From positions 55,015,597 through 55,079,596 of the forward strand of contig CM074512.1 of assembly GCA_037379345.1 (NCBI GenBank): a stretch of 64,000 nucleotides of DNA, in the 5' to 3' direction. Each line of letters begins with the position of its first letter. The first letter of the stretch is position 1. The translations under genes were made by a program, and so were the position numbers. Below the pieces are notes generated by a model, which searched no databases, was not told the DNA's origin, and saw only the letters and a list, made by a program, of their open reading frames with translations. Shown here piece by piece: positions 193 through 63,890 of this stretch. The DNA comes from Perna viridis (Eukaryota).

Positions 193-239
193 GAAAATCT
201 TGGCAATGCTATCATTGCACACCAGCTGATAAGGAATAA
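193..239 (+). pseudogene. Decayed 5' part of exon A
   Basis: tttcag|GAAAATCTTGGCAATGCTATCATTGCACACCAGCTGATAAGGAATAA reads KSWQCYHCTPADKE*. Confidence 0.7.
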
Positions 240-674: not shown

Positions 675-1031
675 GTAATACAATAGTGAATTGACTTGTA
701 TTGGGTATGTAATTCTCATCGTGAATCCGCAGTTTAACGAACATGTCTCCGAATCTTCAATTCAAAAGCATGCAAATTTATCATTTACAGAGCGATGAGT
801 TTTGTATTTAGAGCAAAACCTGTGTAAAATACCGACAAAAAATAACAACAAGCAACATGATAAAAGTGTAAGGAAAAGATACAAACAGTAATACTACGTT
901 CCGAAATCCGGAGGGTGAAAAAAATTATGCCGTTTCCAAATTTCAAAATGCTCTTCATCATGAAATTCTGTAAGTGTTTTACAAGGACGATTAATGTAAG
1001 TGGTGTCGCATGTTTTATTTACATCTTTCAG

Positions 1032-1190
1032 TCAAGCCTTGGAAATGCTATCATTGGACACCAGCTGATTTGAAAGAACACGCAAAACTTGGACAGAAGA
1101 AAGTATGTGAACGAAATGGAAGAGTGTTTACACGTGGATTGAACGGAAAATATCCAGGATGTAAAACTTGTTGGTGCTGTCAACTAAATA
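1032..1190 (+). CDS. Exon A (first of 19): 53-aa six-Cys module VKPWKCYHWTPADLKEHAKLGQKKVCERNGRVFTRGLNGKYPGCKTCWCCQ(P/L)N
   Basis: tttcag|TCAAG...AAATA|gtaagc, phase 1-1. Other copies start at 2371, 3710, 5048, 6387, 7725, 9063, 10401, 11740, 13078, 22210, 23548, 24884, 26220, 27556, 28892, 30228, 31564 and 40658 (159 nt each). Confidence 0.9.
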
Positions 1191-4100: not shown

Positions 4101-7100
4101 CAATTCATCCAGTCAAGTATAATACTTATTTCACAAACAAATACGTTCAGAGTTTGTACGGTATCGTTATGTCTTCATGTTTAATATCCTGATATGACTG
4201 TTTCAAACTCCCACCCCATTCTACATTGATGTTTACCGCTTTACAATAAAACACCATTCGGAGTAATTTCTTACTACATTCCAATAAAATAATTCATGTT
4301 TCGTTTGATTTAAAGCCAGTTTCCCCCTTAGTATTTCAATGTCATTACATTTTATCATCTTTCAATTAAACACACGCTGGAACGGTTGCATTAGAAAGGT
4401 TCCAAAAACCATATTTTCCTGTCTTTTAAGTCGGTGTTGGATTGGTTTAAGCCTGAAAGCTACGTTTTAGTTTAAGCGGCTAAATATCGTAGCTTAACTA
4501 GTATGTTTTGTTGACAATGCTTCACATATAAGGAGATAATATTTATTGTAGAACGAGTTCCATGTAAGAAAAAATGCCACAAGAAGGCTAGATGCAGAAA
4601 TGGAAAATGCGTTTGTAAGAAAGGCTACAGAGGAAATGGAAGGATGTGCACAAAAATACCAGGTATCAAAAATTTATAAAATCAGCCATCACTTTTATCG
4701 TTTGCTGTAAGATAAAATGCTTCAAAGTTTAAATAAGTAAAGTGTAGATTGTCAGGAGTGTCCTCCCTAGTTCTGAAATCGAAAATTTTGATCGAAGATG
4801 TTCAGTGAAGGAAAGATGGTATATTGAGTTGCATAGACGAACAAGATAGCTTGCAAATTATCAAAATTTAATAGTAAAACCAAATACCTTATAATAGAAT
4901 ATGTATTTTGTAATTTAATTGGCTGAACAATGTTTGTCTTTCCTTGATACAAGTTACATCTTTAAATTAGATGTTTTGGGCTTGAATATATTTTCTACAA
5001 GAACGATTAATGTAAGTGGTGTCACATGTTTTATTTACATCTTTCAGTCAAGCCTTGGAAATGCTATCATTGGACACCAGCTGATTTGAAAGAACACGCA
5101 AAACTTGGACAGAAGAAAGTATGTGAACGAAATGGAAGAGTGTTTACACGTGGATTGAACGGAAAATATCCAGGATGTAAAACTTGTTGGTGCTGTCAAC
5201 CAAATAGTAAGCTGACTAATTATCTCTGTATACTTTAATGACAGGTAAAGAATTGCAAACCCTTAGTTTCGAACGATTTTAGACTAACTAATTACAGCTA
5301 TAACACACGTTTAAATTGATATTTATGAACTACGGACATTGGTGCAAAGATCTGAGAAAAACTGGTTTTGATGGCATCCGACTATATGATACGCTTTTCG
5401 GTTTTTCGGCATAATTTTTGTTTTGCACTTTGTCCTTTTCAATTCATCCAGTCAAGTATAATACTTATTTCACAAACAAATACGCTCAGAGTTTGTACGG
5501 TATCGTTATGTCTTCATGTTTAATATCCTGATATGACTGTTTCAAACTCCGACCCCATTCTTCATTGATGTTTACCGTTTTACAATAAAACACAATTCGG
5601 AGTAATTTCTTACTACATTCCAATAAAATAATTCATGTTTCGTTTGAATTAAAGCCAGTTTCCCCCTTAGTATTTCAATGTCATTGTATTTTGTCATCTT
5701 TCAATTAAACACACGCTGGAACGGTTGCATTAGAAAGGTTCCAAAAACCATATTTTCCTGTCTTTTAAGTCAGTGTTGGATTGGTTTAAGCCTGAAAGCT
5801 ACGTTTTAGTTTAAGCGGCTAAATATCGTAGCTTAACTAGTATGTTTTGTTGACAATGCTTCACATATAAGGAGATAATATTTATTGTAGAACGAGTTCC
5901 ATGTAAGAAAAAATGCCACAAGAAGGCTAGATGCAGAAATGGAAAATGCGTTTGTAAGAAAGGCTACAGAGGAAATGGAAGGATGTGCACAAAAATACCA
6001 GGTATCAAAAATTTATAAAATCAGCCATCACTTTTATCGTTTGCTGTAAGATAAAATGCTTCAAAGTTTAAATAAGTAAAGTGTAGATTGTCAGGAGTGT
6101 CCTCCCTAGTTCTGAAATCGAAAATTTTGATCGAAGATGTTCAATGAAGGAAAGATGGTATATTGAGTTGCATAGACGAACAAGATAGCTTGCAAATTAT
6201 CAAAATTTAATAGTAAAACCAAATACCTTATAATAGAATATGTATTTTGTAATTTAATTGGCTGAACAATGTTTGTCTGTCCTTGATACAAGTTACATCT
6301 TTAAATTAGATGTGTTGGGCTTGAATATATTTTCTACAAGAACGATTAATGTAAGTGGTGTCACATGTTTTATTTACATCTTTCAGTCAAGCCTTGGAAA
6401 TGCTATCATTGGACACCAGCTGATTTGAAAGAACACGCAAAACTTGGACAGAAGAAAGTATGTGAACGAAATGGAAGAGTGTTTACACGTGGATTGAACG
6501 GAAAATATCCAGGATGTAAAACTTGTTGGTGCTGTCAACCAAATAGTAAGCTGACTAATTATCTCTGTATACTTTAATGACAGGTAAAGAATTACAAACC
6601 CTTAGTTTCGAACGATTTTAGACTAACTAATTACAGCTATAACACACGTTTAAATTGATATTTATGAACTACGGACATTGGTGCAAAGATCTGAGAAAAA
6701 CTGGTTTTGATGGCATCCGACTATATGCTATGCTTTTCGGTTTTTCGGCATAATTTTTGTTTTGCACTTTGTCTTTTCAATTCATCCAGTCAAGTATAAT
6801 ACTTATTTCACAAACAAATACGTTCAGAGTTTGTACGGTATCGTTATGTCTTCATGTTTAGTATCCTGATATGACTGTTTCAAACTCCCACCCCATTCTA
6901 CATTGATGTTTACCGCTTTACAATAAAACACCATTCGGAGTAATTTCTTACTACATTCCAATAAAATAATTCATGTTTCGTTTGATTTAAAGCCAGTTTC
7001 CCCCTTAGTATTTCAATGTCATTACATTTTATCATCTTTCAATCAAACACACGCTGGAACGGTTGCATTAGAAAGGTTCCAAAAACCATATTTTCCTGTC

Positions 7101-10100
7101 TTTTAAGTCGGTGTTGGATTGGTTTAAGCCTGAAAGCTACGTTTTAGTTTAAGCGGCTAAATATCGTAGCTTAACTAGTATGTTTTGTTGACAATGCTTC
7201 ACATATAAGGAGATAATATTTATTGTAGAACGAGTTCCATGTAAGAAAAAATGCCACAAGAAGGCTAGATGCAGAAATGGAAAATGCGTTTGTAAGAAAG
7301 GCTACAGAGGAAATGGAAGGATGTGCACAAAAATACCAGGTATCAAAAATTTATAAAATCAGCCATCACTTTTATCGTTTGCTGTAAGATAAAATGCTTC
7401 AAAGTTTAAATAAGTAAAGTGTAGAATGTCAGGAGGGTCCTCCCTAGTTCTGAAATCGAGAATTTTGATCGAAGATGTTCAGTGAAGGAAAGATGGTATA
7501 TTGAGTTGCATAGACGAACAAGATAGCTTGCAAATTATCAAAATTTAATAGTAAAACCAAATACCTTATAATAGAATATGTATTTTGTAATTGAATTGGC
7601 TGAACAATGTTTGTCTTTCCTTGATACAAGTTACAGCTTTAAATTAGATGTTTTGGGCTTGAATATATTTTCTACAAGAACGATTAATGTAAGTGGTGTC
7701 ACATGTTTTATTTACATCTTTCAGTCAAGCCTTGGAAATGCTATCATTGGACACCAGCTGATTTGAAAGAACACGCAAAACTTGGACAGAAGAAAGTATG
7801 TGAACGAAATGGAAGAGTGTTTACACGTGGATTGAACGGAAAATATCCAGGATGTAAAACTTGTTGGTGCTGTCAACCAAATAGTAAGCTGACTAATTAT
7901 CTCTGTATACTTTAATGACAGGTAAAGAATTACAAACCCTTAGTTTCGAACGATTTTAGACTAACTAATTACAGCTATAACACACGTTTAAATTGATATT
8001 TATGAACTACGGACATTGGTGCAAAGATCTGAGAAAAACTGGTTTTGATGGCATCCGACTATATGCTATGCTTTTCGGTTTTTCGGCATAATTTTTGTTT
8101 TGCACTTTGTCTTTTCAATTCATCCAGTCAAGTATAATACTTATTTCACAAACAAATACGTTCAGAGTTTGTACGGTATCGTTATGTCTTCATGTTTAAT
8201 ATCCTGATATGACTGTTTCAAACTCCCACCCCATTCTACATTGATGTTTACCGCTTTACAATAAAACACCATTCGGAGTAATTTCTTACTACATTCCAAT
8301 AAAATAATTCATGTTTCGTTTGATTTAAAGCCAGTTTCCCCCTTAGTATTTCAATGTCATTGTATTTTGTCATCTTTCAATTAAACACACGCTGGAACGG
8401 TTGCATTAGAAAGGTTCCAAAAACCATATTTTCCTGTCTTTTAAGTCGGTGTTGGATTGGTTTAAGCCTGAAAGCTACGTTTTAGTTTAAGCGGCTAAAT
8501 ATCGTAGCTTAACTAGTATGTTTTGTTGACAATGCTTCACATATAAGGAGATAATATTTATTGTAGAACGAGTTCCATGTAAGAAAAAATGCCACAAGAA
8601 GGCTAGATGCAGAAATGGAAAATGCGTTTGTAAGAAAGGCTACAGAGGAAATGGAAGGATGTGCACAAAAATACCAGGTATCAAAAATTTATAAAATCAG
8701 CCATCACTTTTATCGTTTGCTGTAAGATAAAATGCTTCAAAGTTTAAATAAGTAAAGTGTAGATTGTCAGGAGTGTCCTCCCTAGTTCTGAAATCGAAAA
8801 TTTTGATCGAAGATGTTCAGTGAAGGAAAGATGGTATATTGAGTTGCATAGACGAACAAGATAGCTTGCAAATTATCAAAATTTAATAGTAAAACCAAAT
8901 ACCTTATAATAGAATATGTATTTTGTAATTTAATTGGCTGCACAATGTTTGTCTTTCCTTGATACAAGTTACAGCTTTAAATTAGATGTTTTGGGCTTGA
9001 ATATATTTTCTACAAGAACGATTAATGTAAGTGGTGTCACATGTTTTATTTACATCTTTCAGTCAAGCCTTGGAAATGCTATCATTGGACACCAGCTGAT
9101 TTGAAAGAACACGCAAAACTTGGACAGAAGAAAGTATGTGAACGAAATGGAAGAGTGTTTACACGTGGATTGAACGGAAAATATCCAGGATGTAAAACTT
9201 GTTGGTGCTGTCAACCAAATAGTAAGCTGACTAATTATCTCTGTATACTTTAATGACAGGTAAAGAATTACAAACCCTTAGTGTCGAACGATTTTAGACT
9301 AACTAATTACAGCTATAACACACGTTTAAATTGATATTTACGAACCACGGACATTGTTGCAAAGATTTGAGAAAAACTGGTTTTGATGGCATCCGACTAT
9401 ATGATACGCTTTTCGGTTTTTCGGCATAATTTTTGTTTTGCACTTTGTCTTTTCAATTCATCCAGTCAAGTATAATACTTATTTCACAAACAAATACGCT
9501 CAGAGTTTGTACGGTATCGTTATGTCTTCATGTTTAATATCCTGATATGACTGTTTCAAACTCCGACCCCATTCTTCATTGATGTTTACCGTTTTACAAT
9601 AAAACACCATTCGGAGTAATTTCTCACTACATTCCAATAAAATAATTCATGTTTCGTTTGATTTAAAGCCAGTTTCCCCCTTAGTATTTCAATGTTATTG
9701 TATTTTATCATCTTTCAATTAAACACACGCTGGAACGGTTGCATTAGAAAGGTTCCAAAAACCATATTTTCCTGTCTTTTAAGTCGGTGTTGGATTGGTT
9801 TAAGCCTGAAAGTTACGTTTTAGTTTAAGCGGCTAAATATCGTAGCTTAACTAGTATGTTTTGTTGACAATGCTTCACATATAAGGAGATAATATTTATT
9901 GTAGAACGAGTTCCATGTAAGAAAAAATGCCACAAGAAGGCTAGATGCAGAAATGGAAAATGCGTTTGTAAGAAAGGCTACAGAGGAAATGGAAGGATGT
10001 GCACAAAAATACCAGGTATCAAAAATTTATAAAATCAGCCATCACTTTTATCGTTTGCTGTAAGATAAAATGCTTCAAAGTTTAAATAAGTAAAGTGTAG

Positions 10101-52100: not shown

Positions 52101-55100
52101 TACGATATACTCTCCAAAAATGCCTTAAGTTATAATCATATGTTGTTCAATATGATAACCGTATTGCGATCTTTTGACAATGATATGATAGATTACACAT
52201 GGTAAATGTTTATAGTTATATTTATATATGTATAAACATTGAAACATTTAAACAAGCATTGGATTTAAGCAGCATGATAAAGTTATTTGGTTAAGCAATT
52301 TTTATTTCAACAAGAAAAAAAACCTTGTTTTTGTACTGATTAAAGAAATCAGGTTTATTTTTTTTTCTTCATAGGAATACAATCGAAATGTAACCCCAAA
52401 TGTGGACGCAATGAGTACTGTAGAAATAAGAAATGTAGATGTAAGCGTGGGTTCAAGAGATCGGCCCTTGGAAAATGCAAGCGTAAGTTGAATTTGACTT
52501 TTTTTCATTATTGTTTTTTTCTTTCTGGTTATAAATATTTACACTTTTACAACGTTTGTTGAATTCCAAAGCCCACTCCGTGTGTTCAGTCATACTTTAT
52601 CACATAAAACATGGTTAAATCTCGACTCCTCGTGTCACTTCTGTTTTCATTACGATATACTCTCCAAAAATGCCTTAACTTATAATTATATGTTGTTCAA
52701 TATGATAACCGTATTGCGATCTTTTGACAATGATATGATAGAGTATATTTATATATGTATAAACATTGAAACATTTAAACAAGCATTGGATTTAAGCAGC
52801 ATGATAAAGTTATTTGGTTAAGCAATTTTTATTTTAACAAGAAAAAAAACCTTGTTTTTGTAATGATGAAAGAAATCAGGTTTATTTTTTTTTCTTCATA
52901 GGAATACAATCGAAATGTAACCCTAAATGTGGACGCAATGAGTACTGTAGAAATAAGAAATGTAGATGTAAGCGTGGGTTCAAGAGATCGGCCCTTGGAA
53001 AATGCAAGCGTAAGTTGAATTTGACTTTCTTTCATTATTTTGTTTCAATCTGGTTATAGATATTTACACTTTTACAACGTTTGTTGAATTCCAAAGCCCA
53101 CTCCGTGTGTTCAGTCATACTTTATCACATAAAACATGGTTAAATCTCGACTCCTTGTGTCACTTCTGTTTTCATTACGATATACTCTCCAAAAATGCCT
53201 TAAGTTATAATCATATGTTGTTCAATATGATAACCGTATTGCGATCTTTTGACAATGATATGATAGATTACACATGGTAAATGTTTATAGTTATATTTAT
53301 ATATGTATAAACATTGAAACATTTAAACAAGCATTGGGTTTAAGCAGCATGATAAAGTTATTTGGTTAAGCAATTTTTATTTCAACAAGAAAAAAAAACC
53401 TTGTTTTTGTACTGATTAAAGAAATCAGGTTTATTTGTTTTTCTTCATAGGAATACAATCGAAATGTAACCCTAAATGTGGACGCAATGAGTACTGTAGA
53501 AATAAGAAATGTAGATGTAAGCGTGGGTTCAAGAGATCAGCCCTTGGAAAATGCAAGCGTAAGTTGAATTTGACTTTCTTTCATTATTTTTTTTTCAATC
53601 TGGTTATAAATATTTACACTTTTACAAAGTTTGTTCAATTCCAAAGCCCACGCCGTGTGTTCAGTCATACTTTATCACATAAAACATGGTTAAATCTCGA
53701 CTTCTCGTGTCACTTCTGTTTTCATTACGATATACTCTCCAAAAATGCCTTAAGTTATAATCATATGTTGTTCAATATGATAACCGTATTGCGATCTTTT
53801 GACAATGATATGATAGATTACACATGGTAAATGTTTATAGTTATATTTATATATGTATAAACATTGAAACATTTAAACAAGCATTGGGTTTAAGCAGCAT
53901 GATAAAGTTATTTGGTTAAGCAATTTTTATTTCAACAAGAAAAAAAACCTTGTTTTTGTACTGATTAAAGAAATCAGGTTTATTTTTTTTCTTCATAGGA
54001 ATACAATCGAAATGTAACCCTAAATGTGGACGCAATGAGTACTGTAGAAATAAGAAATGTAGATGTAAGCGTGGGTTCAAGAGATCGGCCCTTGGAAAAT
54101 GCAAGCGTAAGTTGAATTTGACTTTTTTCATTATTTGTTTTCAACCTGGTTATAAATATTTACACTTTTACAACGTTATTTCAATTCCAAAGCCCACTCC
54201 GTGTGTTGAATCATACTTTATCACATAAAACATGGTTAAATCTCGACTCCTCGTGTCACTTCTGTTTTCATTACGATATACTCTCCAAAAATGCCTTAAG
54301 TTATAATCATATGTTGTTCAATATGATAACCGTATTGCGATCTTTTGACAATGATATGATAGAGTATATTTATATATGTATAAACATTGAAACATTTAAA
54401 CAAGCATTGGATTTAAGCAGCATGATAAAGTTATTTGGTTAAGCAATCTTTATTTTAACAAGAAAAAAAACCTTGTTTTTGTAATGATAAAAGAAATCAG
54501 GTTTATTTTTTTTCTTCATAGGAATACCATCGAAATGTAACCCTAAATGTGGACGCAATCAGTACTGTAGAAATAAGAAATGTAGATGTAAGCGTGGGTT
54601 CAAGAGATCGGCCCTTGGAAAATGCATGCGTAAGTTGAATTTGACTTTTTTCATTATTTGTTTTCAACCTGGTTATAAATATTTACACTTTTACAACGTT
54701 ATTTCAATTCCAAAGCCCACTCCGTGTGTTGAATCATACTTTATCACATAAAACATGGTTAAATCTCGACTCCTCGTGTCACTTCTGTTTTCATTACGAT
54801 ATACTCTCCAAAAATGCCTTAAGTTATAATCATATGTTGTTCAATATGATAACCGTATTGCGATCTTTTGACAATGATATGATAGAGTACACATGGTAAA
54901 TGTTTATAGTTATATTTATATATGTATAAACATTGAAACATTTAAACAAGCATTGGGTTTAAGCAGCATGATAAAGTTATTTGGTTAAGCAATTTTTATT
55001 TTAACAAGAAAAAAAACCTTGTTTTTGTACTGATTAAAGAAATCTGGTTTATTTTTTTTTCTTCATAGGAATACCATCGAAATGTAACCCTAAATGTGGA

Positions 55101-58100
55101 CGCAATCAGTACTGTAGAAATAAGAAATGTAGATGTAAGCGTGGGTTCAAGAGATCGGCCCTTGGGAAATGCAAGCGTAAGTTGAATTTGACTTTTTTTC
55201 ATTATTTTTTTTTCAATCTGGTTATAAATATTTACACTTTTACAAAGTTTGTTCAATTCCAAAGCCCACTCCGTGTGTTCAGTCATACTTTATCACATAA
55301 AACATGGTTAAATCTCGACTCCTTGTGTCACTTCTGTTTTCATTACGATATACTCTCCAAAAATGCCTTAAGTTATAATCATATGTTGTTCAATATGATA
55401 ACCGTATTGCGATCTTTTGACAATGATATGATAGAGTATATTTATATATGTATAAACATTGAAACATTTAAACAAGCATTGGATTTAAGCAGCATGATAA
55501 AGTTATTTGGTTAAGCAATTTTTATTTTAACAAGAAAAAAAACCTTGTTTTTGTAATGATGAAAGAAATCAGGTTTATTTTTTTTTCTTCATAGGAATAC
55601 AATCGAAATGTAACCCGAAATGTGGACGCAATGAGTACTGTAGAAATAAGAAATGTAGATGTAAGCGTGGGTTCAAGAGATCGGCCCTTGGAAAATGCAA
55701 GCGTAAGTTGAATTTGACTTTCTTTCATTATTTTGTTTCAATCTGGTTATAGATATTTACACTTTTACAACGTTTGTTGAATTCCAAAGCCCACTCCGTG
55801 TGTTCAGTCATACTTTATCACATAAAACATGGTCAAATCTCGACTCCTCGTGTCACTTCTGTTTTCATTACGATATACTCTCCAAAAATGCCTTAAGTCA
55901 TAATCATATTTTGTTCAATATGATAACCGTATTGCGATCTTTTGACAATGATATGATAGAGTACACATGGTAAATGTTTATAGTTATATTTATGTATGTA
56001 TAAACATTGAAACATTTAAACAAGCATTGGATTTAAGCAGCATGATAAAGTTATTTGGTTAAGCAATTTTTATTTTAACAAGAAAAAAACCTTGTTTTTG
56101 TAATGATAAAAGAAATCAGGTTTATTTTTTTTTCTTCATAGGAATACCATCGAAATGTAACCCTAAATGTGGACGCAATGAGTTCTGTAGAAATAAGAAA
56201 TGTAGATGTAAGCGTGGGTTCAAGAGATCGGCCCTTGGGAAATGCAAGCGTAAGTTGAATTTGACTTTTTTTCATTATTTGTTTTTCATTCTGCTTATAA
56301 ATATTTACACTTTTACAACGTTATTTCAATTCCAAAGCCCACTCCGTGTGTTCAGTCATACTTTATCATATACAACATGAGTTAAATATCGACTCCTTGT
56401 GTCACGTCTATGTTTTCATTACGACATACTCTCCAAAAGTGCCTTATTTTATAATCATATGTTGTTCAATATGATAATCATATTGCGATCTTTTGAGAGT
56501 TACATGATATATTGATTATTCAATGTGGTCGTATGTTGACCATATGTTTGTACATTAATATTAACAGTAAACATTATAACAATTATTGGATCAAATCGGC
56601 ATAGGGGGTTATTGTTTTGTAAGGAATTAACAAGAAAACATGTTGTTTCATTAGTATTGATAGAAGAAATAATGTTATTATTTTTCTTTTCTTCATAGAA
56701 ATACAATCGAAATGTAACCCGAAATGTGGACGCAATGAGTACTGTAGAAATAAGAAATGTAGATGTAAGCGTGGGTTCAAGAGATCGGCCCTTGGAAAAT
56801 GCAAGCGTAAGTCGAATTTGACATTTTTTTCATTATTTGTTTTTCAATCTGGTTATAAATATTTACACTTTTACAAAGTTTGTTCAATTCCAAAGCCCAC
56901 GCCGTGTGTTCAGTCATACTTTATCACATAAAACATGGTTAAATCTCGACTTCTCGTGTCACTTCTGTTTTCATTACGATATACTCTCCAAAAATGCCTT
57001 AAGTTATAATCATGTGTTGTTCAATATGATAACCGTATTGCGATCTTTTGACAATGATATGATAGAGTATATTTAAATGTATGTACATTGAAACATTTAA
57101 ACAAGCATTGGATTTAAGCAGCATGATAAAGTTATTTGGTTAAGCAATTTTTATTTTAACAAGAAAAAAAAACCTTGTTTTTGTAATGATGAAAGAAATC
57201 AGGTTTATTTTTTTTTTCTTCGTAGGAATACAATCGAAATGTAACCCTAAATGTGGACGCAATGAGTACTGTAGAAATAAGAAATGTAGATGTAAGCGTG
57301 GGTTCAAGAGATCGGCCCTTGGAAAATGCAAGCGTAAGTTGAATTTGACTTTCTTTCATTATTTTGTTTCAATCTGGTTATAGATATTTACACTTTTACA
57401 ACGTTTGTTGAATTCCAAAGCCCACTACGTGTGTTCAGTCATACTTTATCACATAAAACATGGTTAAATCTCGACTCCTCGTGTCACTTCTGTTTTCATT
57501 ACGATATACTCTCCAAAAATGCCTTAAGTCATAATCATATTTTGTTCAATATGATAACCGTATTGCGATCTTTTGACAATGATATGATAGAGTACACATG
57601 GTAAATGTTTATAGTTATATTTATATATGTATTAACATTGAAACATTTAAACAAGCATTGGATTTAAGCAGCATGATAAAGTTATTTTGTTAAGCAATTT
57701 TTATTTTAACAAGAAAAAAAACCTTGTTTTTGTAATGATAAAAGAAATCAGGTTTATTTTTTTTTTGTCTTCATAGGAATACCATCGAAATGTAACCCTA
57801 AATGTGGACGCAATGAGTTCTGTAGAAATAAGAAATGTAGATGTAAGCGTGGGTTCAAGAGATCGGCCCTTGGGAAATGCAAGCGTAAGTTGAATTTGAC
57901 TTTTTTTCATTATTTGTTTTTCATTCTGGTTATAAATATTTACACTTTTACAACGTTTGTTCAATTCCAAAGCCCACTCCGTGTGTTCAGTCATACTTTA
58001 TCATATACAACATGAGTTAAATATCGACTCCTTGTGTCACGTCTATGTTTTCATTACGACATACCATCCAAAAGTGCCTTATTTTATAATCATATGTTGT

Positions 58101-61100
58101 TCAATATGATAATCATATTGCGATCTTTTGAGAGTTACATGATATATTGATTATTCAATGTGGTCGTATGTTGACCATATGTTTGTACATTAATATTAAT
58201 AGTAAACATTATAACAATTATTGGATCAAATCGGCATAGGGGGTTATTGTTTTGTATGGAATGAACAAGAAAACATGTTGTTTCATTAGTATTGATAGAA
58301 GAAATAATGTTATTATTTTTCTTTTCTTCATAGAAATACAATCGAAATGTAACCCGAAATGTGGACGCAATGAGTACTGTAGAAATAAGAAATGTAGATG
58401 TAAGCGTGGGTTCAAGAGATCGGCCCTTGGAAAATGCAAGCGTAAGTCGAATTTGACATTTTTTTCATTATTTTTTTTCAATCTGGTTATAAATATTTAC
58501 ACTTTTACAAAGTTTGTTCAATTCCAAAGCCCACTCCGTGTGTTCAGTCATACTTTATCACATAAAACATGGTTAAATCTCGACTCCTTGTGTCACTTCT
58601 GTTTTCATTACGATATACTCTCCAAAAATGCCTTAAGTTATAATCATATGTTGTTCAATATGATAACCGTATTGCCATCTTTTGACAATGATATGATAGA
58701 TTACACATGGTAAATGTTTATAGTTATATTTATGTATGTATAAACATTGAAACATTTAAACAAGCATTGGATTTAAGCAGCATGATAAAGTTATTTGGTT
58801 AAGCAATTTTTATTTTAACAAGAAAAAAACCTTGTTTTTGTAATGATAAAAGAAATCAGGTTTATTATTTTTTCTTCATAGGAATACCATCGAAATGTAA
58901 CCCTAAATGTGGACGCAATGAGTTCTGTAGAAATAAGAAATGTAGATGTAAGCGTGGGTTCAAGAGATCGGCCCTTGGGAAATGCAAGCGTAAGTTGAAT
59001 TTGACTTTTTTTCATTATTTGTTTTTCATTCTGCTTATAAATATTTACACTTTTACAACGTTATTTCAATTCCAAAGCCCACTCCGTGTGTTCAGTCATA
59101 CTTTATCATATACAACATGAGTTAAATATCGACTCCTTGTGTCACGTCTATGTTTTCATTACGACATACTCTCCAAAAGTGCCTTATTTTATAATCATAT
59201 GTTGTTCAATATGATAATCATATTGCGATCTTTTGAGAGTTACATGATATATTGATTATTCAATGTGGTCGTATGTTGACCATATGTTTGTACATTAATA
59301 TTAACAGTAAACATTATAACAATTATTGGATCAAATCGGCATAGGGGGTTATTGTTTTGTAAGGAATTAACAAGAAAACATGTTGTTTCATTAGTATTGA
59401 TAGAAGAAATAATGTTATTATTTTTCTTTTCTTCATAGAAATACAATCGAAATGTAACCCGAAATGTGGACGCAATGAGTACTGTAGAAATAAGAAATGT
59501 AGATGTAAGCGTGGGTTCAAGAGATCGGCCCTTGGAAAATGCAAGCGTAAGTCGAATTTGACATTTTTTTCATTATTTGTTTTTCAATCTGGTTATAAAT
59601 ATTTACACTTTTACAAAGTTTGTTCAATTCCAAAGCCCACGCCGTGTGTTCAGTCATACTTTATCACATAAAACATGGTTAAATCTCGACTTCTCGTGTC
59701 ACTTCTGTTTTCATTACGATATACTCTCCAAAAATGCCTTATTTTATAATCATATGTTGTTCAATATGATAACCGTATTGCGATCTTTTGACAATGATAT
59801 GATAGAGTATATTTATATATGTATAAACATTGAAACATTTAAACAAGCATTGGATTTAAGCAGCATGATAAAGTTATTTGGTTAAGCAATTTTTATTTTA
59901 ACAAGAAAAAAAACCTTGTTTTTGTAATGATGAAAGAAATCAGGTTTATTTTTTTTTTCTTCGTAGGAATACAATCGAAATGTAACCCTAAATGTGGACG
60001 CAATGAGTACTGTAGAAATAAGAAATGTAGATGTAAGCGTGGGTTCAAGAGATCGGCCCTTGGAAAATGCAAGCGTAAGTTGAATTTGACTTTCTTTCAT
60101 TATTTTGTTTCAATCTGGTTATAGATATTTACACTTTTACAACGTTTGTTGAATTCCAAAGCCCACTCCGTGTGTTCAGTCATACTTTATCACATAAAAC
60201 ATGGTTAAATCTCGACTCCTCGTGTCACTTCTGTTTTCATTACGATATACTCTCCAAAAATGCCTTAAGTCATAATCATATTTTGTTCAATATGATAACC
60301 GTATTGCGATCTTTTGACAATGATATGATAGAGTACACATGGTAAATGTTTATAGTTATATTTATATATGTATTAACATTGAAACATTTAAACAAGCATT
60401 GGATTTAAGCAGCATGATAAAGTTATTTTGTTAAGCAATTTTTATTTTAACAAGAAAAAAAACCTTGTTTTTGTAATGATAAAAGAAATCAGGTTTATTT
60501 TTTTTGTCTTCATAGGAATACCATCGAAATGTAACCCTAAATGTGGACGCAATGAGTATTGTAGAAATAAGAAATGTAGATGTAAGCGTGGGTTCAAGAG
60601 ATCGGCCCTTGGGAAATGCAAGCGTAAGTTGAATTTGACTTTTTTTCATTATTTTTTTTCAATCTGGTTATAAATATTTACACTTTTACAACGTTTGTTC
60701 AATTCCAAAGCCCACTCCGTGTGTTCAGTCATACTTTATCATATACAACATGAGTTAAATATCGACTCCTCGTGTCACTTCTGTTTTCATTACGATATAC
60801 TCTCCAAAAATGCCTTAAGTTATAATCATATGTTGTTAAATATGAAAATCGTATTGCGATCTTTTGACAATGATATGATAGAGTATATTTAAATGTATGT
60901 ACATTGAAACATTTAAACAAGCATTGGATTTAAGCAGCATGATAAAGTTATTTGGTTAAGCAATTTTTATTTTAACAAGAAAAAAAAACCTTGTTTTTGT
61001 AATGATGAAAGAAATCAGGTTTATTTTTTTTTTCTTCGTAGGAATACAATCGAAATGTAACCCTAAATGTGGACGCAATGAGTACTGTAGAAATAAGAAA

Positions 61101-63890
61101 TGTAGATGTAAGCGTGGGTTCAAGAGATCGGCCCTTGGAAAATGCAAGCGTAAGTCGAATTTGACTTTCTTTCATTATTTTGTTTCAATCTGGTTATAGA
61201 TATTTACACTTTTACAACGTTTGTTGAATTCCAAAGCCCACTACGTGTGTTCAGTCATACTTTATCACATAAAACATGGTTAAATCTCGACTCCTCGTGT
61301 CACTTCTGTTTTCATTACGATATACTCTCCAAAAATGCCTTAAGTCATAATCATATTTTGTTCAATATGATAACCGTATTGCGATCTTTTGACAATGATA
61401 TGATAGAGTACACATGGTAAATGTTTATAGTTATATTTATATATGTATTAACATTGAAACATTTAAACAAGCATTGGATTTAAGCAGCATGATAAAGTTA
61501 TTTTGTTAAGCAATTTTTATTTTAACAAGAAAAAAAACCTTGTTTTTGTAATGATAAAAGAAATCAGGTTTATTTTTTTTTTGTCTTCATAGGAATACCA
61601 TCGAAATGTAACCCTAAATGTGGACGCAATGAGTATTGTAGAAATAAGAAATGTAGATGTAAGCGTGGGTTCAAGAGATCGGCCCTTGGGAAATGCAAGC
61701 GTAAGTTGAATTTGACTTTTTTTCATTATTTGTTTTTCATTCTGGTTATAAATATTTACACTTTTACAACGTTTGTTCAATTCCAAAGCCCACTCCGTGT
61801 GTTCAGTCATACTTTATCATATACAACATGAGTTAAATATCGACTCCTTGTGTCACGTCTATGTTTTCATTACGACATACCATCCAAAAGTGCCTTATTT
61901 TATAATCATATGTTGTTCAATATGATAATCATATTGCGATCTTTTGAGAGTTACATGATATATTGATTATTCAATGTGGTCGTATGTTGACCATATGTTT
62001 GTACATTAATATTAATAGTAAACATTATAACAATTATTGGATCAAATCGGCATAGGGGGTTATTGTTTTGTATGGAATGAACAAGAAAACATGTTGTTTC
62101 ATTAGTATTGATAGAAGAAATAATGTTATTATTTTTCTTTTCTTCATAGAAATACAATCGAAATGTAACCCGAAATGTGGACGCAATGAGTACTGTAGAA
62201 ATAAGAAATGTAGATGTAAGCGTGGGTTCAAGAGATCGGCCCTTGGAAAATGCAAGCGTAAGTCGAATTTGACATTTTTTTCATTATTTGTTTTTCAATC
62301 TGGTTATAAATATTTACACTTTTACAAAGTTTGTTCAATTCCAAAGCCCACGCCGTGTGTTCAGTCATACTTTATCACATAAAACATGGTTAAATCTCGA
62401 CTTCTCGTGTCACTTCTGTTTTCATTACGATATACTCTCCAAAAATGCCTTATTTTATAATCATATGTTGTTCAATATGATAACCGTATTGCGATCTTTT
62501 GACAATGATATGATAGAGTATATTTATATATGTATAAACATTGAAACATTTAAACAAGCATTGGATTTAAGCAGCATGATAAAGTTATTTGGTTAAGCAA
62601 TTTTTATTTTAACAAGAAAAAAAACCTTGTTTTTGTAATGATGAAAGAAATCAGGTTTATTTTTTTTTCTTCGTAGGAATACAATCGAAATGTAACCCTA
62701 AATGTGGACGCAATGAGTACTGTAGAAATAAGAAATGTAGATGTAAGCGTGGGTTCAAGAGATCGGCCCTTGGAAAATGCAAGCGTAAGTTGAATTTGAC
62801 TTTCTTTCATTATTTTGTTTCAATCTGGTTATAGATATTTACACTTTTACAACGTTTGTTGAATTCCAAAGCCCACTCCGTGTGTTCAGTCATACTTTAT
62901 CACATAAAACATGGTTAAATCTCGACTCCTCGTGTCACTTCTGTTTTCATTACGATATACTCTCCAAAAATGCCTTAAGTCATAATCATATTTTGTTCAA
63001 TATGATAACCGTATTGCGATCTTTTGACAATGATATGATAGAGTACACATGGTAAATGTTTATAGTTATATTTATATATGTATTAACATTGAAACATTTA
63101 AACAAGCATTGGATTTAAGCAGCATGATAAAGTTATTTTGTTAAGCAATTTTTATTTTAACAAGAAAAAAAACCTTGTTTTTGTAATGATAAAAGAAATC
63201 AGGTTTATTTTTTTTGTCTTCATAGGAATACCATCGAAATGTAACCCTAAATGTGGACGCAATGAGTATTGTAGAAATAAGAAATGTAGATGTAAGCGTG
63301 GGTTCAAGAGATCGGCCCTTGGGAAATGCAAGCGTAAGTTGAATTTGACTTTTTTTCATTATTTGTTTTTCATTCTGGTTATAAATATTTACACTTTTAC
63401 AACGTTTGTTCAATTCCAAAGCCCACTCCGTGTGTTCAGTCATACTTTATCATATACAACATGAGTTAAATATCGACTCCTTGTGTCACGTCTATGTTTT
63501 CATTACGACATACCATCCAAAAGTGCCTTATTTTATAATCATATGTTGTTCAATATGATAATCATATTGCGATCTTTTGAGAGTTACATGATATATTGAT
63601 TATTCAATGTGGTCGTATGTTGACCATATGTTTGTACATTAATATTAATAGTAAACATTATAACAATTATTGGATCAAATCGGCATAGGGGGTTATTGTT
63701 TTGTATGGAATGAACAAGAAAACATGTTGTTTCATTAGTATTGATAGAAGAAATAATGTTATTATTTTTCTTTTCTTCATAGAAATACAATCGAAATGTA
63801 ACCCGAAATGTGGACGCAATGAGTACTGTAGAAATAAGAAATGTAGATGTAAGCGTGGGTTCAAGAGATCGGCCCTTGGAAAATGCAAGC
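1032..63890 (+). CDS. Partial giant multi-exon gene (89 exons in window, ~3,985 aa): zonadhesin/FCGBP/mucin-D-domain-like protein with tandem cationic Cys-rich modules; 5' and 3' ends lie outside the window
   Basis: All exons are bounded by AG/GT and join with compatible phases and no stop: 19 A exons (159 nt), 16 B (111 nt), two 7-exon VWD blocks (1,419 nt each) and 40 J (108 nt). VWD (GDPHYVTFD...GICGDCNG), C8, TIL, EGF and antistasin motifs were recognised by eye. A single transcript is inferred, not shown. Confidence 0.85.
1875..1985 (+). CDS. Exon B (first of 16): 37-aa cationic EGF-like module KRVPCKKKCHKKARCRNGKCVCKKGYRGNGRMCTKIP
   Basis: ttgtag|AACGAG...ACCAG|gtatc, phase 1-1, with the EGF C-x-C-x2-GY-x-G-x-G-x2-C tail. 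Too short for the ORF track. Other copies start at 3214, 4552, 5891, 7229, 8567, 9905, 11244, 12582, 23052, 24388, 25724, 27060, 28396, 29732 and 31068. Confidence 0.9.
13950..14259 (+). mobile_element. Partial, diverged copy of the same retrozyme-like repeat in sense orientation (duplicate at ~32435-32717)
   Basis: Reverse-complement similarity to ~16490-16790 (ctgctggtgaga, tgcaggtggaccaaaggtc, ccttgtattgca); ribozyme core is mutated. Confidence 0.6.
14683..14787 (+). CDS. Exon C: EGF-like (SPMCGSKVCNRNANCQNGRCVCKRGFTGDGVSSCV)
   Basis: ttatag|GTCCG...CGTTG|gtatgt, 105 nt, phase 1-1, six-Cys EGF pattern. Confidence 0.9.
15076..15199. repeat. 64-bp tandem duplication in intron C-D (also ~33534-33657)
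   Basis: ctcatctattatcccacagt(g/a)aacaggaaagatctataagggcacatatttcaa occurs twice. Confidence 0.9.
15234..15478 (+). CDS. Exon D: VWD domain, N-terminal half, with GDPH motif
   Basis: tag|GTACC...ATATTT|gtaagt; encodes TCTCSATGDPHYVTFDRQLIHFMGICTYTM...; phase 1-0. Confidence 0.92.
15848..15890 (+). mobile_element. Short 3'-terminal fragment of the same Penelope-like family (duplicate at ~34306-34348)
   Basis: attaccgctataaccttggttccctttattactcttt matches 20032-20068. Confidence 0.6.
15947..16248 (+). CDS. Exon E: VWD domain, C-terminal half
   Basis: ttctag|GTAAAT...AAAAG|gtaata; contains CGFRVTWDG...PKTYSGKINGICGDCNGKKDDF; phase 0-2. Confidence 0.9.
16321..16366 (-). ncRNA. Type I hammerhead ribozyme motif, antisense to the host gene
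   Basis: Minus strand reads CUGAUGA-GAGGA cau UCCUU-GAAA-CAUGC auaca GCAUG-UC: complete catalytic core with stems II and III, but only ~2 bp of stem I. Confidence 0.7.
16321..16825 (-). mobile_element. Retrozyme-like repeat, ~1.3 monomers of ~388 nt (duplicate at ~34779-35283)
   Basis: A second, degenerate core (CUGGUGA...GAAAC) at 16725-16751 lies 388 nt from the first, with homologous flanks. Confidence 0.65.
16974..17260 (+). CDS. Exon F: C8 domain
   Basis: tttag|GTGT...TTTGTC|gtaagt; PFMPC...YKSCLFDAC...C...AEQC...KWRRADFC; phase 2-1. Confidence 0.9.
17993..18195 (+). CDS. Exon G: TIL domain
   Basis: tttcag|CTTTA...ACCCG|gtatag; CPYNMEYS...GCPATC...EGCKCKHGFVLSNDKCVRKSQCGC; phase 1-0. 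Confidence 0.92.
18608..20070 (+). mobile_element. 5'-truncated, defective Penelope-like retroelement (RT, no C-terminal GIY-YIG; possibly Naiad-type) in intron G-H
   Basis: LPSMYWIPKLHKNPYK*RF, KTYDFSILYTSIPH, QTVGIPMGTNCAPLLADLFL and FRYIDDVL motifs; one stop and two frameshifts; ORF ends at 19790, followed by a ~280-bp tail. Confidence 0.88.
20335..20524 (+). CDS. Exon H: post-TIL linker plus EGF-like module
   Basis: ttatag|CTAAAT...TAAAA|gtaagt; ...KCHKNARCVPRNGGYKCVCKKFFKGNGVDVCK; phase 0-1. Confidence 0.88.
20680..20766 (+). CDS. Exon I: antistasin-like module (RLCLKRYCPKRCPGGYKKNRYGCRTCACI)
   Basis: ttatag|GACTA...TATAG|gtaagg, 87 nt, phase 1-1; C-x4-C-x3-C-x2-GY-x2-N-x2-GC-x2-C-x-C pattern. 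Confidence 0.85.
   Translation, partial: DYALNVIVPNVAQVATKRIDMDAELVLV
21791..21858 (+). pseudogene. Decayed antistasin-like pseudo-exon (duplicate at ~40249-40316)
   Basis: CIKPYPGG*K then, after a frameshift, CKTCTCK|gtaata; compare exon I CPKRCPGGYK...CRTCAC. Confidence 0.55.
22160..31740 (+). repeat. Tandem array 2: ~1,336-bp A/B unit, 7 full units plus a terminal A
   Basis: Exon A recurs every 1,336-1,338 bp; the introns carry array-specific variants. Confidence 0.97.
33141..33245 (+). CDS. Exon C, copy 2 (EGF-like)
   Basis: Duplicate of 14683-14787; splice sites intact. Confidence 0.9.
33692..33936 (+). CDS. Exon D, copy 2 (VWD N-half, GDPH)
   Basis: Duplicate of 15234-15478 with one R>K change. 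Confidence 0.92.
34405..34706 (+). CDS. Exon E, copy 2 (VWD C-half)
   Basis: Duplicate of 15947-16248. Confidence 0.9.
34779..34824 (-). ncRNA. Hammerhead ribozyme motif, duplicated copy
   Basis: Identical to 16321-16366. Confidence 0.7.
35432..35718 (+). CDS. Exon F, copy 2 (C8)
   Basis: Duplicate of 16974-17260 with one L>H change. Confidence 0.9.
36452..36654 (+). CDS. Exon G, copy 2 (TIL)
   Basis: Duplicate of 17993-18195. Confidence 0.92.
37067..38529 (+). mobile_element. Penelope-like element, duplicated copy
   Basis: Same site and same lesions as 18608-20070. Confidence 0.88.
38794..38983 (+). CDS. Exon H, copy 2 (linker plus EGF-like)
   Basis: Duplicate of 20335-20524. Confidence 0.88.
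39139..39225 (+). CDS. Exon I, copy 2 (antistasin-like)
   Basis: Duplicate of 20680-20766. Confidence 0.85.
   Translation, partial: DYALNVIVPNVAQVATKRIDMDAELVLV
40658..40816 (+). CDS. Solitary exon A (19th copy), not followed by exon B
   Basis: Intact AG/GT; carries the same DKK variant as 22210-22368. Confidence 0.88.
42300..42407 (+). CDS. First J exon (divergent): TQRPKCIPKCGRNEYCRNKKCRCKRGFKRSALGKCK
   Basis: aatag|CACAA...CAAGC|gtaagt, 108 nt, phase 1-1. Confidence 0.85.
42994..43044 (+). pseudogene. Half J exon with intact acceptor but deleted 3' half and donor
   Basis: catag|GAATACAATCG...TGTAGAAA joined directly to intronic cattataacaagcattgg. Confidence 0.8.
43176..43283 (+). CDS. 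Exon J (first of 39 regular copies): 36-aa cationic EGF-like module (R)IQSKCNPKCGRNEYCRNKKCRCKRGFKRSALGKCK
   Basis: Poly-T tract + catag|...CAAGC|gtaagt. Other copies start at 43725, 44273, 44796, 45343, 45870, 46418, 46965, 47512, 48039, 48587, 49135, 49682, 50209, 50757, 51305, 51828, 52375, 52902, 53451, 53999, 54522, 55069, 55595, 56142, 56699, 57226, 57777, 58334, 58882, 59439, 59967, 60516, 61042, 61593, 62150, 62677, 63226 and 63783. Confidence 0.9.

What the first reader, a model, noticed from the sequence alone, without database searches (positions are those of the whole stretch)
1032..63890. Apparent satellite DNA is one giant exon-tandem gene for a hyper-cationic, disulfide-rich VWD protein; candidate adhesive, cement or mucus scaffold
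Seen: three apparent satellite arrays are exon+intron units that splice into a single frame of about 3,985 aa, open at both ends. B has 15 K/R in 37 aa and no acidic residue; J has 14 K/R and one E in 36 aa. Known: VWD-C8-TIL assemblies mediate polymerisation in mucins, vWF and FCGBP and occur in the sea-star adhesive Sfp1; tandem basic EGF repeats characterise mussel foot protein-2. Inference: this is a secreted polycationic structural or adhesive polymer. I do not recognise the architecture, and repeat-masking would probably hide or fragment it in annotation.
Basis: partly seen in the sequence, partly recalled or inferred. Interest (0 to 1): 0.85.

Follow-up and report, generated by a model that had tools for sequence, protein, structure and literature searches.

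The report
Giant polycationic mussel protein gene
What looks like three blocks of satellite DNA is the repeated middle of one roughly 84-kb mussel gene whose about 100 small exons appear to encode a secreted, very positively charged, disulfide-rich protein of about 4,600 residues; its relatives in Mytilus are predicted but unstudied, and its function is still only inferred.

Summary
The window holds three tandem arrays: 1338 bp x10, 1336 bp x8, and 547 bp x39 in the window (42 in all). Each unit carries short AG/GT exons in intron phase 1. The 89 in-window exons join into 3,985 codons with no stop. Exons have about six times fewer variable columns than introns.

Pfam finds VWD, C8, TIL, EGF and Antistasin in two unique blocks. 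B and J are basic six-Cys EGF-like modules. A belongs to no Pfam family.

The gene continues past the window: 4 more J-type exons, three Kringles, two unassigned domains, then a stop and AATAAA. A candidate signal exon lies 11 kb upstream. The full model has 100 exons and 4,619 aa, with pI about 10, 13% Cys and 28% Lys+Arg.

The genome statistics match Perna viridis. Mytilus species have predicted "zonadhesin-like" or uncharacterised homologues with the same VWD block, a basic EGF exon array and a Kringle tail. One GenBank model reads that array out of frame.

The function (a multimerising polycationic scaffold for mucus or adhesion) is therefore inferred. The duplicated 18-kb super-unit could be an assembly artefact. 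The scan had already noted the A module on this window (s1-774393).

The parts
1032..13236 (+). Array 1: ten A exons (159 nt; starts 1032, 2371, 3710, 5048, 6387, 7725, 9063, 10401, 11740, 13078) alternating with nine B exons (111 nt; starts 1875, 3214, 4552, 5891, 7229, 8567, 9905, 11244, 12582). Unit length 1338 bp.
   Evidence: All exons have AG/GT and are phase 1-1. Exons are 99-100% alike. Nucleotide diversity is 0.002 in exons against 0.025 in introns.
6387..6545 (+). Reference A exon (53 codons): a six-Cys, Trp-rich module (..KCYHWT..VCE..G.VFT.G...PGC.TCWCCQP) with no Pfam family.
   Evidence: No Pfam hit. 111 representative homologues at E<=0.001. AlphaFold pLDDT 93.7. No PDB fold match.
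7229..7339 (+). Reference B exon (37 codons): a basic six-Cys EGF-like module with 15 K/R and no acidic residue.
   Evidence: Sequence read. Pfam EGF_3 at E 1.2e-5, below the gathering score. It resembles the basic EGF array of Mytilus P0134 and P0016.
14683..14787 (+). Exon C: EGF-like module (block 1).
   Evidence: EGF_3 at E 3.7e-4. 61% identical to P0016 residues 1184-1219.
15234..16248 (+). Exons D (15234-15478) and E (15947-16248): together one VWD domain, with a GDPH motif and a CGDC motif.
   Evidence: Pfam VWD positions 1-73 (E 8e-14) and 79-155 (E 5.8e-13). 65% and 55% identical to the second VWD of Mytilus P0016. The motifs were read.
16974..17260 (+). Exon F: C8 domain.
   Evidence: Pfam C8 at E 1.1e-10.
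17993..18195 (+). Exon G: TIL domain.
   Evidence: Pfam TIL at E 2.7e-11.
18400..20070 (+). Reverse-transcriptase-like transposon fragment inside the G-H intron. It is not part of the protein, and the same insertion is present in block 2.
   Evidence: Open frames seen. The G-H spacing is identical in both blocks, and the blocks are 99.1% alike.
20335..20524 (+). Exon H: the end of the D-assembly plus an EGF_3 domain.
   Evidence: Pfam EGF_3 at E 3.7e-9. Splice sites read.
20680..20766 (+). Exon I: Antistasin-type six-Cys module.
   Evidence: Pfam Antistasin at E 2.5e-7, above the cut-off.
22210..31722 (+). Array 2: eight A exons (starts 22210, 23548, 24884, 26220, 27556, 28892, 30228, 31564) alternating with seven B exons (starts 23052, 24388, 25724, 27060, 28396, 29732, 31068). 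Unit length 1336 bp.
33141..39225 (+). Block 2: a second copy of exons C to I (C 33141-33245, D 33692-33936, E 34405-34706, F 35432-35718, G 36452-36654, H 38794-38983, I 39139-39225).
   Evidence: Exons 99.6-100% identical to block 1. The whole 8.97-kb block is 99.1% identical, with 42 mismatches and 14 gaps.
40658..40816 (+). Last A exon. It links block 2 to the J array.
42300..42407 (+). First J-type exon, with a variant 5' end (..QRPKCIPKCGRNEYC..).
42994..43045 (+). Truncated J copy without a donor site: a dead exon remnant inside an intron.
43176..63890 (+). Array 3: 39 J exons of 108 nt (36 codons; basic six-Cys EGF-like; 14 K/R, one E) in units of 523-557 bp, with a higher-order period of about 2169 bp. 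Three more J exons and a last variant J follow beyond the window, ending at window coordinate 66046.
   Evidence: Every copy has AG/GT and is open. There are 11 distinct exon sequences among 41. The unit's intron occurs almost only at this locus in the genome.

Best explanation
The window is the repetitive middle of a single protein-coding gene on the + strand of a mytilid mussel chromosome. The genome statistics fit Perna viridis.

Gene model. The gene spans about 84 kb (G000:C2:55004756-55089105) and has about 100 exons, nearly all symmetric in intron phase 1. Units can therefore be gained or lost by unequal crossing-over without breaking the frame. That is how the three satellite-like arrays arose and how they stay homogeneous.

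Domain order of the predicted product (4,619 aa, about 530 kDa, pI about 10, 13% Cys, 28% Lys+Arg):
1. candidate signal peptide;
2. one divergent A module;
3. (A-B)x9-A;
4. EGF, VWD-C8-TIL, EGF, Antistasin;
5. (A-B)x7-A;
6. a second EGF, VWD-C8-TIL, EGF, Antistasin block;
7. A;
8. 44 basic EGF-like J modules;
9. Kringle, an unassigned domain, Kringle, Kringle, and an unassigned C-terminal domain.

It is the Perna counterpart of an uncharacterised Mytilus family that databases call 'zonadhesin-like'.

Inferred mechanism (not shown). It is a secreted extracellular scaffold. The two VWD-C8-TIL assemblies would link molecules by disulfides, as in mucins and VWF. The long rods of disulfide-locked cationic modules would bind polyanions such as sulfated glycans, mucus, microbial or mineral surfaces. 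The C-terminal Kringles, whose lysine-pocket residues match plasminogen kringle 2, could bind Lys/Arg-rich partners, possibly the arrays of neighbouring molecules. The tissue (gill or pallial mucus, foot or byssus, gametes) is unknown.
For: Gene structure:
- All 100 modelled exons have AG/GT. The chain has no internal stop and ends in TAA, with AATAAA 39 nt downstream.
- Exons are 6-fold less variable than introns in both array types.
- The J-unit intron is confined to this locus, so this is not a genome-wide satellite.

Domains:
- VWD, C8, TIL, EGF_3 and Antistasin.
- Three Kringles.
- Kringle 3 aligns to plasminogen kringle 2, with the D-x-E and R-W residues conserved.

Homology:
- M. galloprovincialis VDI14319.1 (P0016) aligns to the A, C-H, Kringle, X and C-terminal exons at 37-65% identity.
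- The best matches of M. californianus P0134 in this genome are at this locus.
- Mytilus RefSeq models P0134 and P0138 contain long arrays of basic EGF modules in the Cys frame, between the VWD block and the Kringles.
- The M. galloprovincialis locus has 15 or more tandem units of about 1050 bp, each with a phase-1 J-like exon.

Signal exon: the candidate has the same length class, phase and final base as Mytilus exon 1.

Genome identity: 723.1 Mb in 46 contigs, against 723.49 Mb in 15 chromosomes plus 31 contigs and GC 32.9% in PMC11358141.
Against:
- The 5' end is only a candidate.
- No SUEL or WSC exons (present in Mytilus) lie within 140 kb upstream. The gene may therefore be a diverged paralogue rather than a strict orthologue.
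- The two super-units (array plus VWD block) are 97-99% alike. They could be two haplotypes placed in tandem by the assembler, which would roughly halve that part.
- Function is pure inference. Tyr is low, and there is no PTS mucin domain and no cystine knot.
- The gene's motifs do not appear among the published P. viridis foot-protein sequences that I could read.
Confidence: 0.78

Rival explanations
1. The super-unit duplication is an assembly artefact. The true gene would have one (A-B)n array and one VWD-C8-TIL block, and the second copy would be the other haplotype placed in tandem. Array copy numbers would also be unreliable.
For: The blocks are 99.1% identical over 8.97 kb, transposon insertion included. 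Units of arrays 1 and 2 are 97-98% alike. That is within the range of bivalve heterozygosity (general knowledge). Both Perna blocks match the same (second) Mytilus VWD block best.
Against: The window has no N and no gap. The two arrays have consistently different periods (1338 against 1336 bp) and form separate identity clusters. Mytilus also has two VWD blocks per gene.
Confidence: 0.2
2. There are several genes, not one. For example, arrays 1 and 2 with the VWD blocks form one or two genes, and the J array with the Kringle tail forms another.
For: There are no RNA data. Mytilus has short family members such as P0012 (signal, A, WSC x5, Kringle) and dozens of isoforms, so alternative starts and ends are plausible.
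Against: No in-frame stop, terminal exon or start exon was found between the blocks, and every junction keeps phase 1. The Mytilus RefSeq and GenBank models join the VWD blocks, the basic EGF array and the Kringles in one product.
Confidence: 0.1
3. It is a polyprotein precursor. The arrays would be cut at the dibasic sites between modules (for example ..CK-R|IQSKC..) to release many cationic disulfide-rich peptides of about 36 residues with antimicrobial or toxin-like activity.
For: Every J|J junction creates K-R. The modules are small, have six Cys and carry a net charge of about +12, as many mollusc antimicrobial peptides do (the comparison is from general knowledge).
Against: Dibasic pairs also occur inside every module, so the junction is not special. 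VWD, Kringle and lectin-type domains point to a matrix protein. No known antimicrobial precursor has this layout. Nothing was tested.
Confidence: 0.07
4. It is non-coding satellite DNA or a dead gene whose open frames are left over or fortuitous.
For: The arrays have a satellite-like higher-order repeat structure. There is no expression evidence.
Against: About 590 non-redundant codons are open. Splice sites are intact in all 100 exons. Exons are 6-fold more conserved than introns. The Cys frame is conserved between Perna and Mytilus although the DNA has diverged. The array is confined to one locus.
Confidence: 0.03

Closest known systems
Mytilus 'zonadhesin-like' or uncharacterised predicted proteins: M. 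californianus isoform X16 (P0134, 2651 aa), M. edulis isoform X9 (P0138, 3290 aa), M. galloprovincialis VDI14319.1 / UniProt A0A8B6D540 (P0016, 2400 aa), M. coruscus (P0141)
   Same: - Signal peptide and arrays of basic six-Cys EGF modules.
- EGF, VWD-C8-TIL, EGF assemblies 50-65% identical to the Perna block.
- A tandem-exon array of J-like modules before a Kringle, X, Kringle, (Kringle), C-terminal-domain tail.
- One A module in P0016.
- High Lys, Arg and Cys content.

   Different: - Mytilus proteins carry SUEL-lectin and WSC domains, which are absent within 140 kb upstream in Perna.
- Their J-like units alternate with a small four-Cys module.
- They lack the A-B alternation and the Antistasin exon.
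- All are computer predictions. I found no paper that describes them.
Gel-forming mucins, von Willebrand factor, FCGBP (D-assembly proteins)
   Same: VWD-C8-TIL assemblies with GDPH and CGxC motifs, a very large secreted Cys-rich product, and many repeated exons.
   Different: There is no Pro/Thr/Ser mucin domain and no C-terminal cystine knot. The protein is strongly basic rather than acidic and glycan-dominated. It has Kringles and cationic EGF rods instead.
Mussel foot protein 2 (mfp-2 / Pvfp-2) and Fp-2-like EGF-repeat foot proteins
   Same: Tandem EGF-like repeats, a basic pI, a mussel protein.
   Different: - mfp-2 repeats are Tyr/DOPA-rich, and the protein is about 45 kDa without VWD or Kringle domains.
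- The Pvfp-2-type sequences printed in PMC7971044 Fig. S7 are unrelated in sequence.
- The gene's motifs are absent from that supplement.
- Tyr is only 3% here.
Flatworm temporary-adhesion system (Lys/Arg-rich cohesive proteins ap1 and ap3, plus the six-Kringle protein Tmed-krg1; PMC9229212)
   Same: It combines a polycationic Lys-rich repeat protein, VWD/TIL-type cohesive domains and lysine-binding Kringles. Its authors propose charge-based binding that heparin can compete away.
   Different: In flatworms these are separate proteins. The Kringle protein is membrane-bound and acidic, and the cationic repeats are Cys-free and low-complexity. Here all parts sit in one secreted polypeptide and the cationic units are folded EGF-like modules. 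This is a resemblance of principle only, with no homology shown.
Sea-star footprint protein Sfp1
   Different: Not compared by sequence here. Sfp1 is not hyper-cationic and has discoidin domains but no Kringles.

Membership tests
Mytilus 'zonadhesin-like' VWD / basic-EGF / Kringle family (P0134, P0016) | EGF, VWD-C8-TIL, EGF assembly homologous to the family's | tested here: met
   tblastn of P0016 against the locus gives exons C to H at 45-65% identity, E down to 1e-30. The best genome-wide matches of P0134 lie at this locus.
Mytilus 'zonadhesin-like' VWD / basic-EGF / Kringle family (P0134, P0016) | Tandem array of basic six-Cys EGF-like modules between the last VWD block and the Kringles, each on its own phase-1 exon | tested here: met
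   Perna has 44 J exons. P0134 and P0138 have the array in the Cys frame. The M. galloprovincialis locus has 15 or more units of about 1050 bp with the same exon design.
Mytilus 'zonadhesin-like' VWD / basic-EGF / Kringle family (P0134, P0016) | C-terminal tail: Kringle, X domain, Kringle(s), conserved C-terminal domain | tested here: met
   The tail exons lie at window coordinates 66562-73509. They are 44-66% identical to P0016 and P0112. Three Kringles are confirmed by Pfam.
Mytilus 'zonadhesin-like' VWD / basic-EGF / Kringle family (P0134, P0016) | N-terminal SUEL-lectin and WSC domains | tested here: not met
   There is no tblastn hit at E<0.01 in 140 kb upstream. The only SUEL-like match is on another chromosome (C11).
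Gel-forming mucin / VWF D-assembly proteins | VWD + C8 + TIL in this order | tested here: met
   All three Pfam families score above their cut-offs on consecutive exons.
Gel-forming mucin / VWF D-assembly proteins | Pro/Thr/Ser-rich mucin domains and a C-terminal cystine knot | tested here: not met
   No PTS-rich exon is in the model (composition). The C-terminal exon has no Pfam family.
Gel-forming mucin / VWF D-assembly proteins | Disulfide-linked multimerisation | not testable with these tools
   Only the GDPH and CGDC motifs can be read in the sequence.
Mammalian zonadhesin | MAM domains, a mucin-like domain, a transmembrane anchor, sperm expression | tested here: not met
   No MAM or transmembrane exon is among the exons scanned. 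The database name 'zonadhesin' rests on the VWD-C8-TIL match only. Expression was not testable.
Mussel foot protein 2 (mfp-2 / Pvfp-2) | Tyr/DOPA-rich EGF repeats, about 45 kDa, foot-gland expression, presence in the byssal plaque | tested here: not met
   Tyr is 3.1%. The published Pvfp-2-like repeats are different, and the motifs of B and J are absent from the supplement of PMC7971044. Expression was not testable.
Non-coding satellite DNA | Tandem units without coding constraint, usually at many loci or in heterochromatin | tested here: not met
   The arrays are tandem and have a higher-order repeat. However, the exons are under constraint and the unit is confined to this locus.
EGF-like domain (modules B, C, J) | Six Cys in the pattern C-x-C-x-C-x-CxC-x-C with G-[FY] after Cys5 | tested here: inconclusive
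   The pattern is present in the sequence. Pfam EGF_3, EB and EGF_Teneurin hits fall below their gathering scores (E 1e-5 to 5e-3). No structure was predicted for these modules.

The most novel reading that the evidence does not exclude
Mytilid mussels would secrete a previously undescribed class of half-megadalton, self-complementary polycation. Rods of folded, disulfide-locked cationic EGF modules, disulfide-multimerising VWD assemblies and lysine-binding Kringles would sit in one chain. The protein would gel or glue by charge and by Kringle-lysine contacts, doing in one polypeptide what the flatworm ap3/krg1 pair is proposed to do. It would have escaped byssus and mucus proteomics for two reasons: with 28% Lys+Arg, trypsin cuts it into peptides too short to identify, and annotation misreads its satellite-like exon arrays.
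Probability: 0.2. Interest if true: 0.8.

Novelty: new variant of a known kind. Interest (0 to 1): 0.55.

Why it matters
First, it is a clean example of tandem arrays that a repeat masker would call satellite DNA but that are really coding. About 20% of each unit is a phase-1 exon under constraint. Such genes are easily lost or misread: a published Mytilus model reads the homologous array out of frame.

Second, the product is unusual. It is about 530 kDa with pI about 10 and a net charge of roughly +1000, yet it is built from folded Cys-rich modules rather than low-complexity sequence, and it is joined to multimerising VWD assemblies and Kringles.

If it is a component of mussel mucus, byssus or gamete coats, it would be a new ingredient for models of wet adhesion or coacervation. 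It would also need non-tryptic proteomics to be seen at all.

Third, the A module is a confidently folded small domain with no Pfam family and no PDB match.

Tried and rejected
- Perna transcript fragments. A search with exon E found a single 44%-identical ENA protein. The length window of that tool excludes longer ORFs, so this says little.
- Protein atlas. The ESM Atlas gave no usable hit for module A.
- Encoding contig. The look-up of encoding contigs failed for P0016 because only the longest isoform is on record. It worked for P0112.
- Literature. I found no paper describing this family.
  - The P. viridis foot gene pvir_s00819g17 ('highly conserved EGF repeats') looked promising but is a different, Tyr-rich protein.
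  - Two foot-table entries annotated FCGBP-like and plasminogen-like could not be mapped to this locus.
  - The gill-enriched 'WSC domain-containing protein 2' of M. galloprovincialis is only a weak lead for a family member.
- Off-frame similarity. Protein-level similarity between the acidic repeat of P0016 and the off-frame J reading was not significant. The matter was settled at the DNA level instead.
- Joined model. The spliced model was assembled only inside scripts, to count stops and composition.
- Nothing in the window was taken for human sequence.

Full report
WHAT IS IN THE SEQUENCE

The window (33% GC, no N) has three tandem arrays:
- Array 1: a 1338-1339-bp unit, 10 copies, positions 971-13316.
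- Array 2: a 1336-bp unit, 8 copies, positions 22149-31802, plus one further unit at 40597.
- Array 3: a 523-557-bp unit from about 42240 to the window end.

Array 3 has a higher-order period of about 2169 bp whose copies are 100% alike. Between the arrays lie two unique blocks of about 9 kb that are 99.1% identical to each other.

I read single units and mapped all copies with blastn. This showed that each 1338-bp unit holds two exons, A (159 nt) and B (111 nt), and each 547-bp unit holds one, J (108 nt). Each unique block holds seven exons, C to I.

Every exon is flanked by AG and GT. All array exons are symmetric in intron phase 1, so any number of units keeps the frame. The 89 in-window exons join into 11,955 nt = 3,985 codons without a stop. 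The other two frames of the same chain hold 95 and 492 stops.

IS IT CODING?

- Variable alignment columns are about six times rarer in exons than in introns: 4/270 against 89/1070 in A-B units (p = 1e-5), and 9/108 against 168/459 in J units (p = 8e-10).
- The intron of the J unit occurs almost only at this locus in the 723-Mb genome (47 of 48 hits). This is therefore not a dispersed satellite.
- Pfam assigns D+E to one VWD domain, F to C8, G to TIL, H to EGF_3 and I to Antistasin, all above their cut-offs.
- B, C and J give sub-threshold EGF-type hits and show the EGF cysteine pattern.
- A has no Pfam family.

THE REST OF THE GENE

The window is G000:C2:55015597-55079596. I fetched 140 kb upstream and 40 kb downstream.

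Downstream, in window coordinates, the model continues as follows:
- three more J exons, then a last variant J (65939-66046);
- Kringle 1 (66562-66807);
- an unassigned 76-codon domain X (67031-67258);
- Kringle 2 (69394-69621);
- Kringle 3 (71514-71738);
- a last exon (73229-73509) ending in TAA, with AATAAA 39 nt further on.

All of these have AG/GT and are in phase 1.

Upstream there is one divergent A-like exon (-4552 to -4340). The only ATG exon in 30 kb with a hydrophobic core and a strong phase-1 donor is at -10840 to -10789 (MRRWSVHSLVLLILFVL). It has the same design as exon 1 of the Mytilus homologue: 17 against 19 codons plus one G, phase 1.

The full model has 100 exons and 4,619 aa, about 530 kDa, pI about 10, with 13% Cys and 17% Lys + 10% Arg against 5% Asp+Glu. 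The 5' end is a candidate only.

WHOSE GENOME?

G000 has 723.1 Mb in 46 contigs. The published Perna viridis assembly has 723.49 Mb in 15 chromosomes plus 31 contigs, at 32.9% GC (PMC11358141). This identification is an inference from statistics, not a direct test.

RELATIVES

A full-library HMMER search with module A found 111 representative proteins. One is M. galloprovincialis VDI14319.1 (P0016, 2400 aa), called 'hypothetical' in GenBank and 'Zonadhesin' in UniProt.

Its domains, in order, are:
- signal peptide and SUEL lectin;
- basic EGFs, WSC domains and one A module;
- EGF, VWD-C8-TIL, EGF;
- SUEL lectin and EGF;
- a second VWD-C8-TIL, EGF;
- an odd acidic repeat;
- EGF, Kringle, X, Kringle and the C-terminal domain.

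It aligns to the Perna exons A', C-H, Kringle 1-3, X and C-terminal at 37-65% identity.

Further relatives include the RefSeq models 'zonadhesin-like isoform X16' of M. californianus (P0134, a cluster of 36 members) and 'uncharacterized protein isoform X9' of M. edulis (P0138). These contain long arrays of basic EGF modules, such as GCKRKCRINERCVKGKCRCKKGSFRTKLGACKTK, exactly where Perna has J.

I fetched the M. galloprovincialis locus (L024). It has 15 or more tandem units of about 1050 bp, each with a phase-1 exon for that module. The 'acidic repeat' of the GenBank model is the same DNA read one base out of frame. This has two consequences:
- The exon-array design and its Cys frame are conserved between two mussel genera, which is strong support for the reading.

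The best matches of P0134 in the Perna genome lie at this locus. A SUEL-like match lies on another chromosome, and no SUEL or WSC exon lies within 140 kb upstream. Perna's gene is therefore a diverged member of the family: it has A-B arrays and Antistasin exons in place of SUEL and WSC.

MODULE A

With an alignment of 35 short homologues (A1), AlphaFold gives pLDDT 93.7. Neither Foldseek (best E 6) nor VIA-align against 48,161 chains (best Z 2.0) finds a known fold. The scan's note s1-774393 on this module agrees with this.

HOW IT PROBABLY WORKS (INFERENCE)

The domain set is that of a secreted matrix protein.
- VWD-C8-TIL assemblies, with GDPH and CGDC motifs visible in exons D and E, mediate disulfide multimerisation in mucins and VWF (established knowledge).
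- About 80 small, disulfide-locked modules carrying +8 to +15 net charge each would make stiff polycationic rods suited to binding sulfated glycans, mucus polyanions, microbes or charged surfaces.
- Kringle 3 is most like plasminogen kringle 2 and keeps its D-x-E and R-W pocket residues, so lysine or arginine binding is plausible.
- In flatworms a Kringle protein is proposed to hold a Lys-rich cohesive protein, and heparin abolishes adhesion (PMC9229212). Here both partners would be in one chain.

I could not find which tissue makes the protein. I rate a multimerising extracellular polycation scaffold at about 0.6, given that the gene is expressed. A specifically byssal or adhesive role rates about 0.2.

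CAVEATS

- The two 18-21-kb super-units could be haplotypes placed in tandem, and copy numbers in such arrays are assembly-dependent.
- The start of the gene is unproven.
- A 480-nt hyper-basic open stretch with phase-1 AG/GT lies at -2015 to -1536 and may be a further exon.

COMPARISON AND NOVELTY

I found no paper that describes this family. The published P. viridis foot proteins with EGF repeats are different sequences.

The architecture is not new to sequence databases, since Mytilus predictions exist. It is uncharacterised, and the Perna version is a distinct variant. I therefore class it as a new variant of a known kind (giant secreted VWD/EGF mosaic proteins with tandem-exon arrays), of moderate interest.

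It was not sent to any search, and all searches used single exons by reference.

Noticed in passing
upstream of the window: window coordinates -2015 to -1536 (G000:C2:55013581-55014060; L009:7985-8464), + strand: A 480-nt purine-rich stretch bounded by a good acceptor (ttttttacAG) and donor (GTAAGA), both in phase 1 like the gene's other exons. It is open only in that frame (7 and 5 stops in the others). It would encode 161 codons with 87 Lys/Arg and no Cys. This may be an extra hyper-basic linker exon between the A-like exon and the first A exon.
   Followed up: partly
L024:33500-50200 (M. galloprovincialis UYJE01002865.1): The GenBank gene models VDI14319 and VDI14320 read the tandem J-like exon array one base out of frame. 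They give an 'acidic repeat' (DVNESVGLMKGVLEENVDARK) where the Cys frame reads GCKRKCRINERCVRGKCRCKKG. RefSeq models of M. californianus and M. edulis use the Cys frame.
   Followed up: yes
window 6387-6545 and the 18 other A exons: Module A (C-x19-C-x17-C-x2-C-W-C-C, motif CYHWT...VCE..G.VFT.G...PGCG.CWCCQP) is a widespread unnamed domain with 111 representative proteins. These include bivalve proteins made only of A repeats (Mercenaria P0001) and environmental proteins with Tectonin and Xlink domains (P0007). The AlphaFold model is confident, and there is no PDB fold match and no Pfam family.
   Followed up: partly
window 18400-20070 and 36860-38530; also window coordinates -5800 to -5000 upstream: The same reverse-transcriptase-like transposon fragment sits in the G-H intron of both VWD blocks. 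A related copy lies in the long 5' intron. The shared insertion shows that the block duplication is younger than the insertion.
   Followed up: no
window 187-230, 600-660 and 42994-43045: Dead exon remnants. There are two partial A-exon starts upstream of the first complete A exon, and one J exon truncated after 52 nt without a donor site. These are footprints of unequal crossing-over at the array edges.
   Followed up: partly
G000:C6:3047635-3047798 and G000:C11:8526248-8526583: A paralogous A-type exon (76% identity) lies on another chromosome. A SUEL-lectin exon 45% identical to the N-terminus of the Mytilus homologue lies on a third. The family therefore has other members or dispersed parts in this genome.
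   Followed up: no
window 15076-15199 and 33534-33657: A 64-bp unit repeated 1.9 times in the C-D intron of both blocks. It has no evident function.
   Followed up: no
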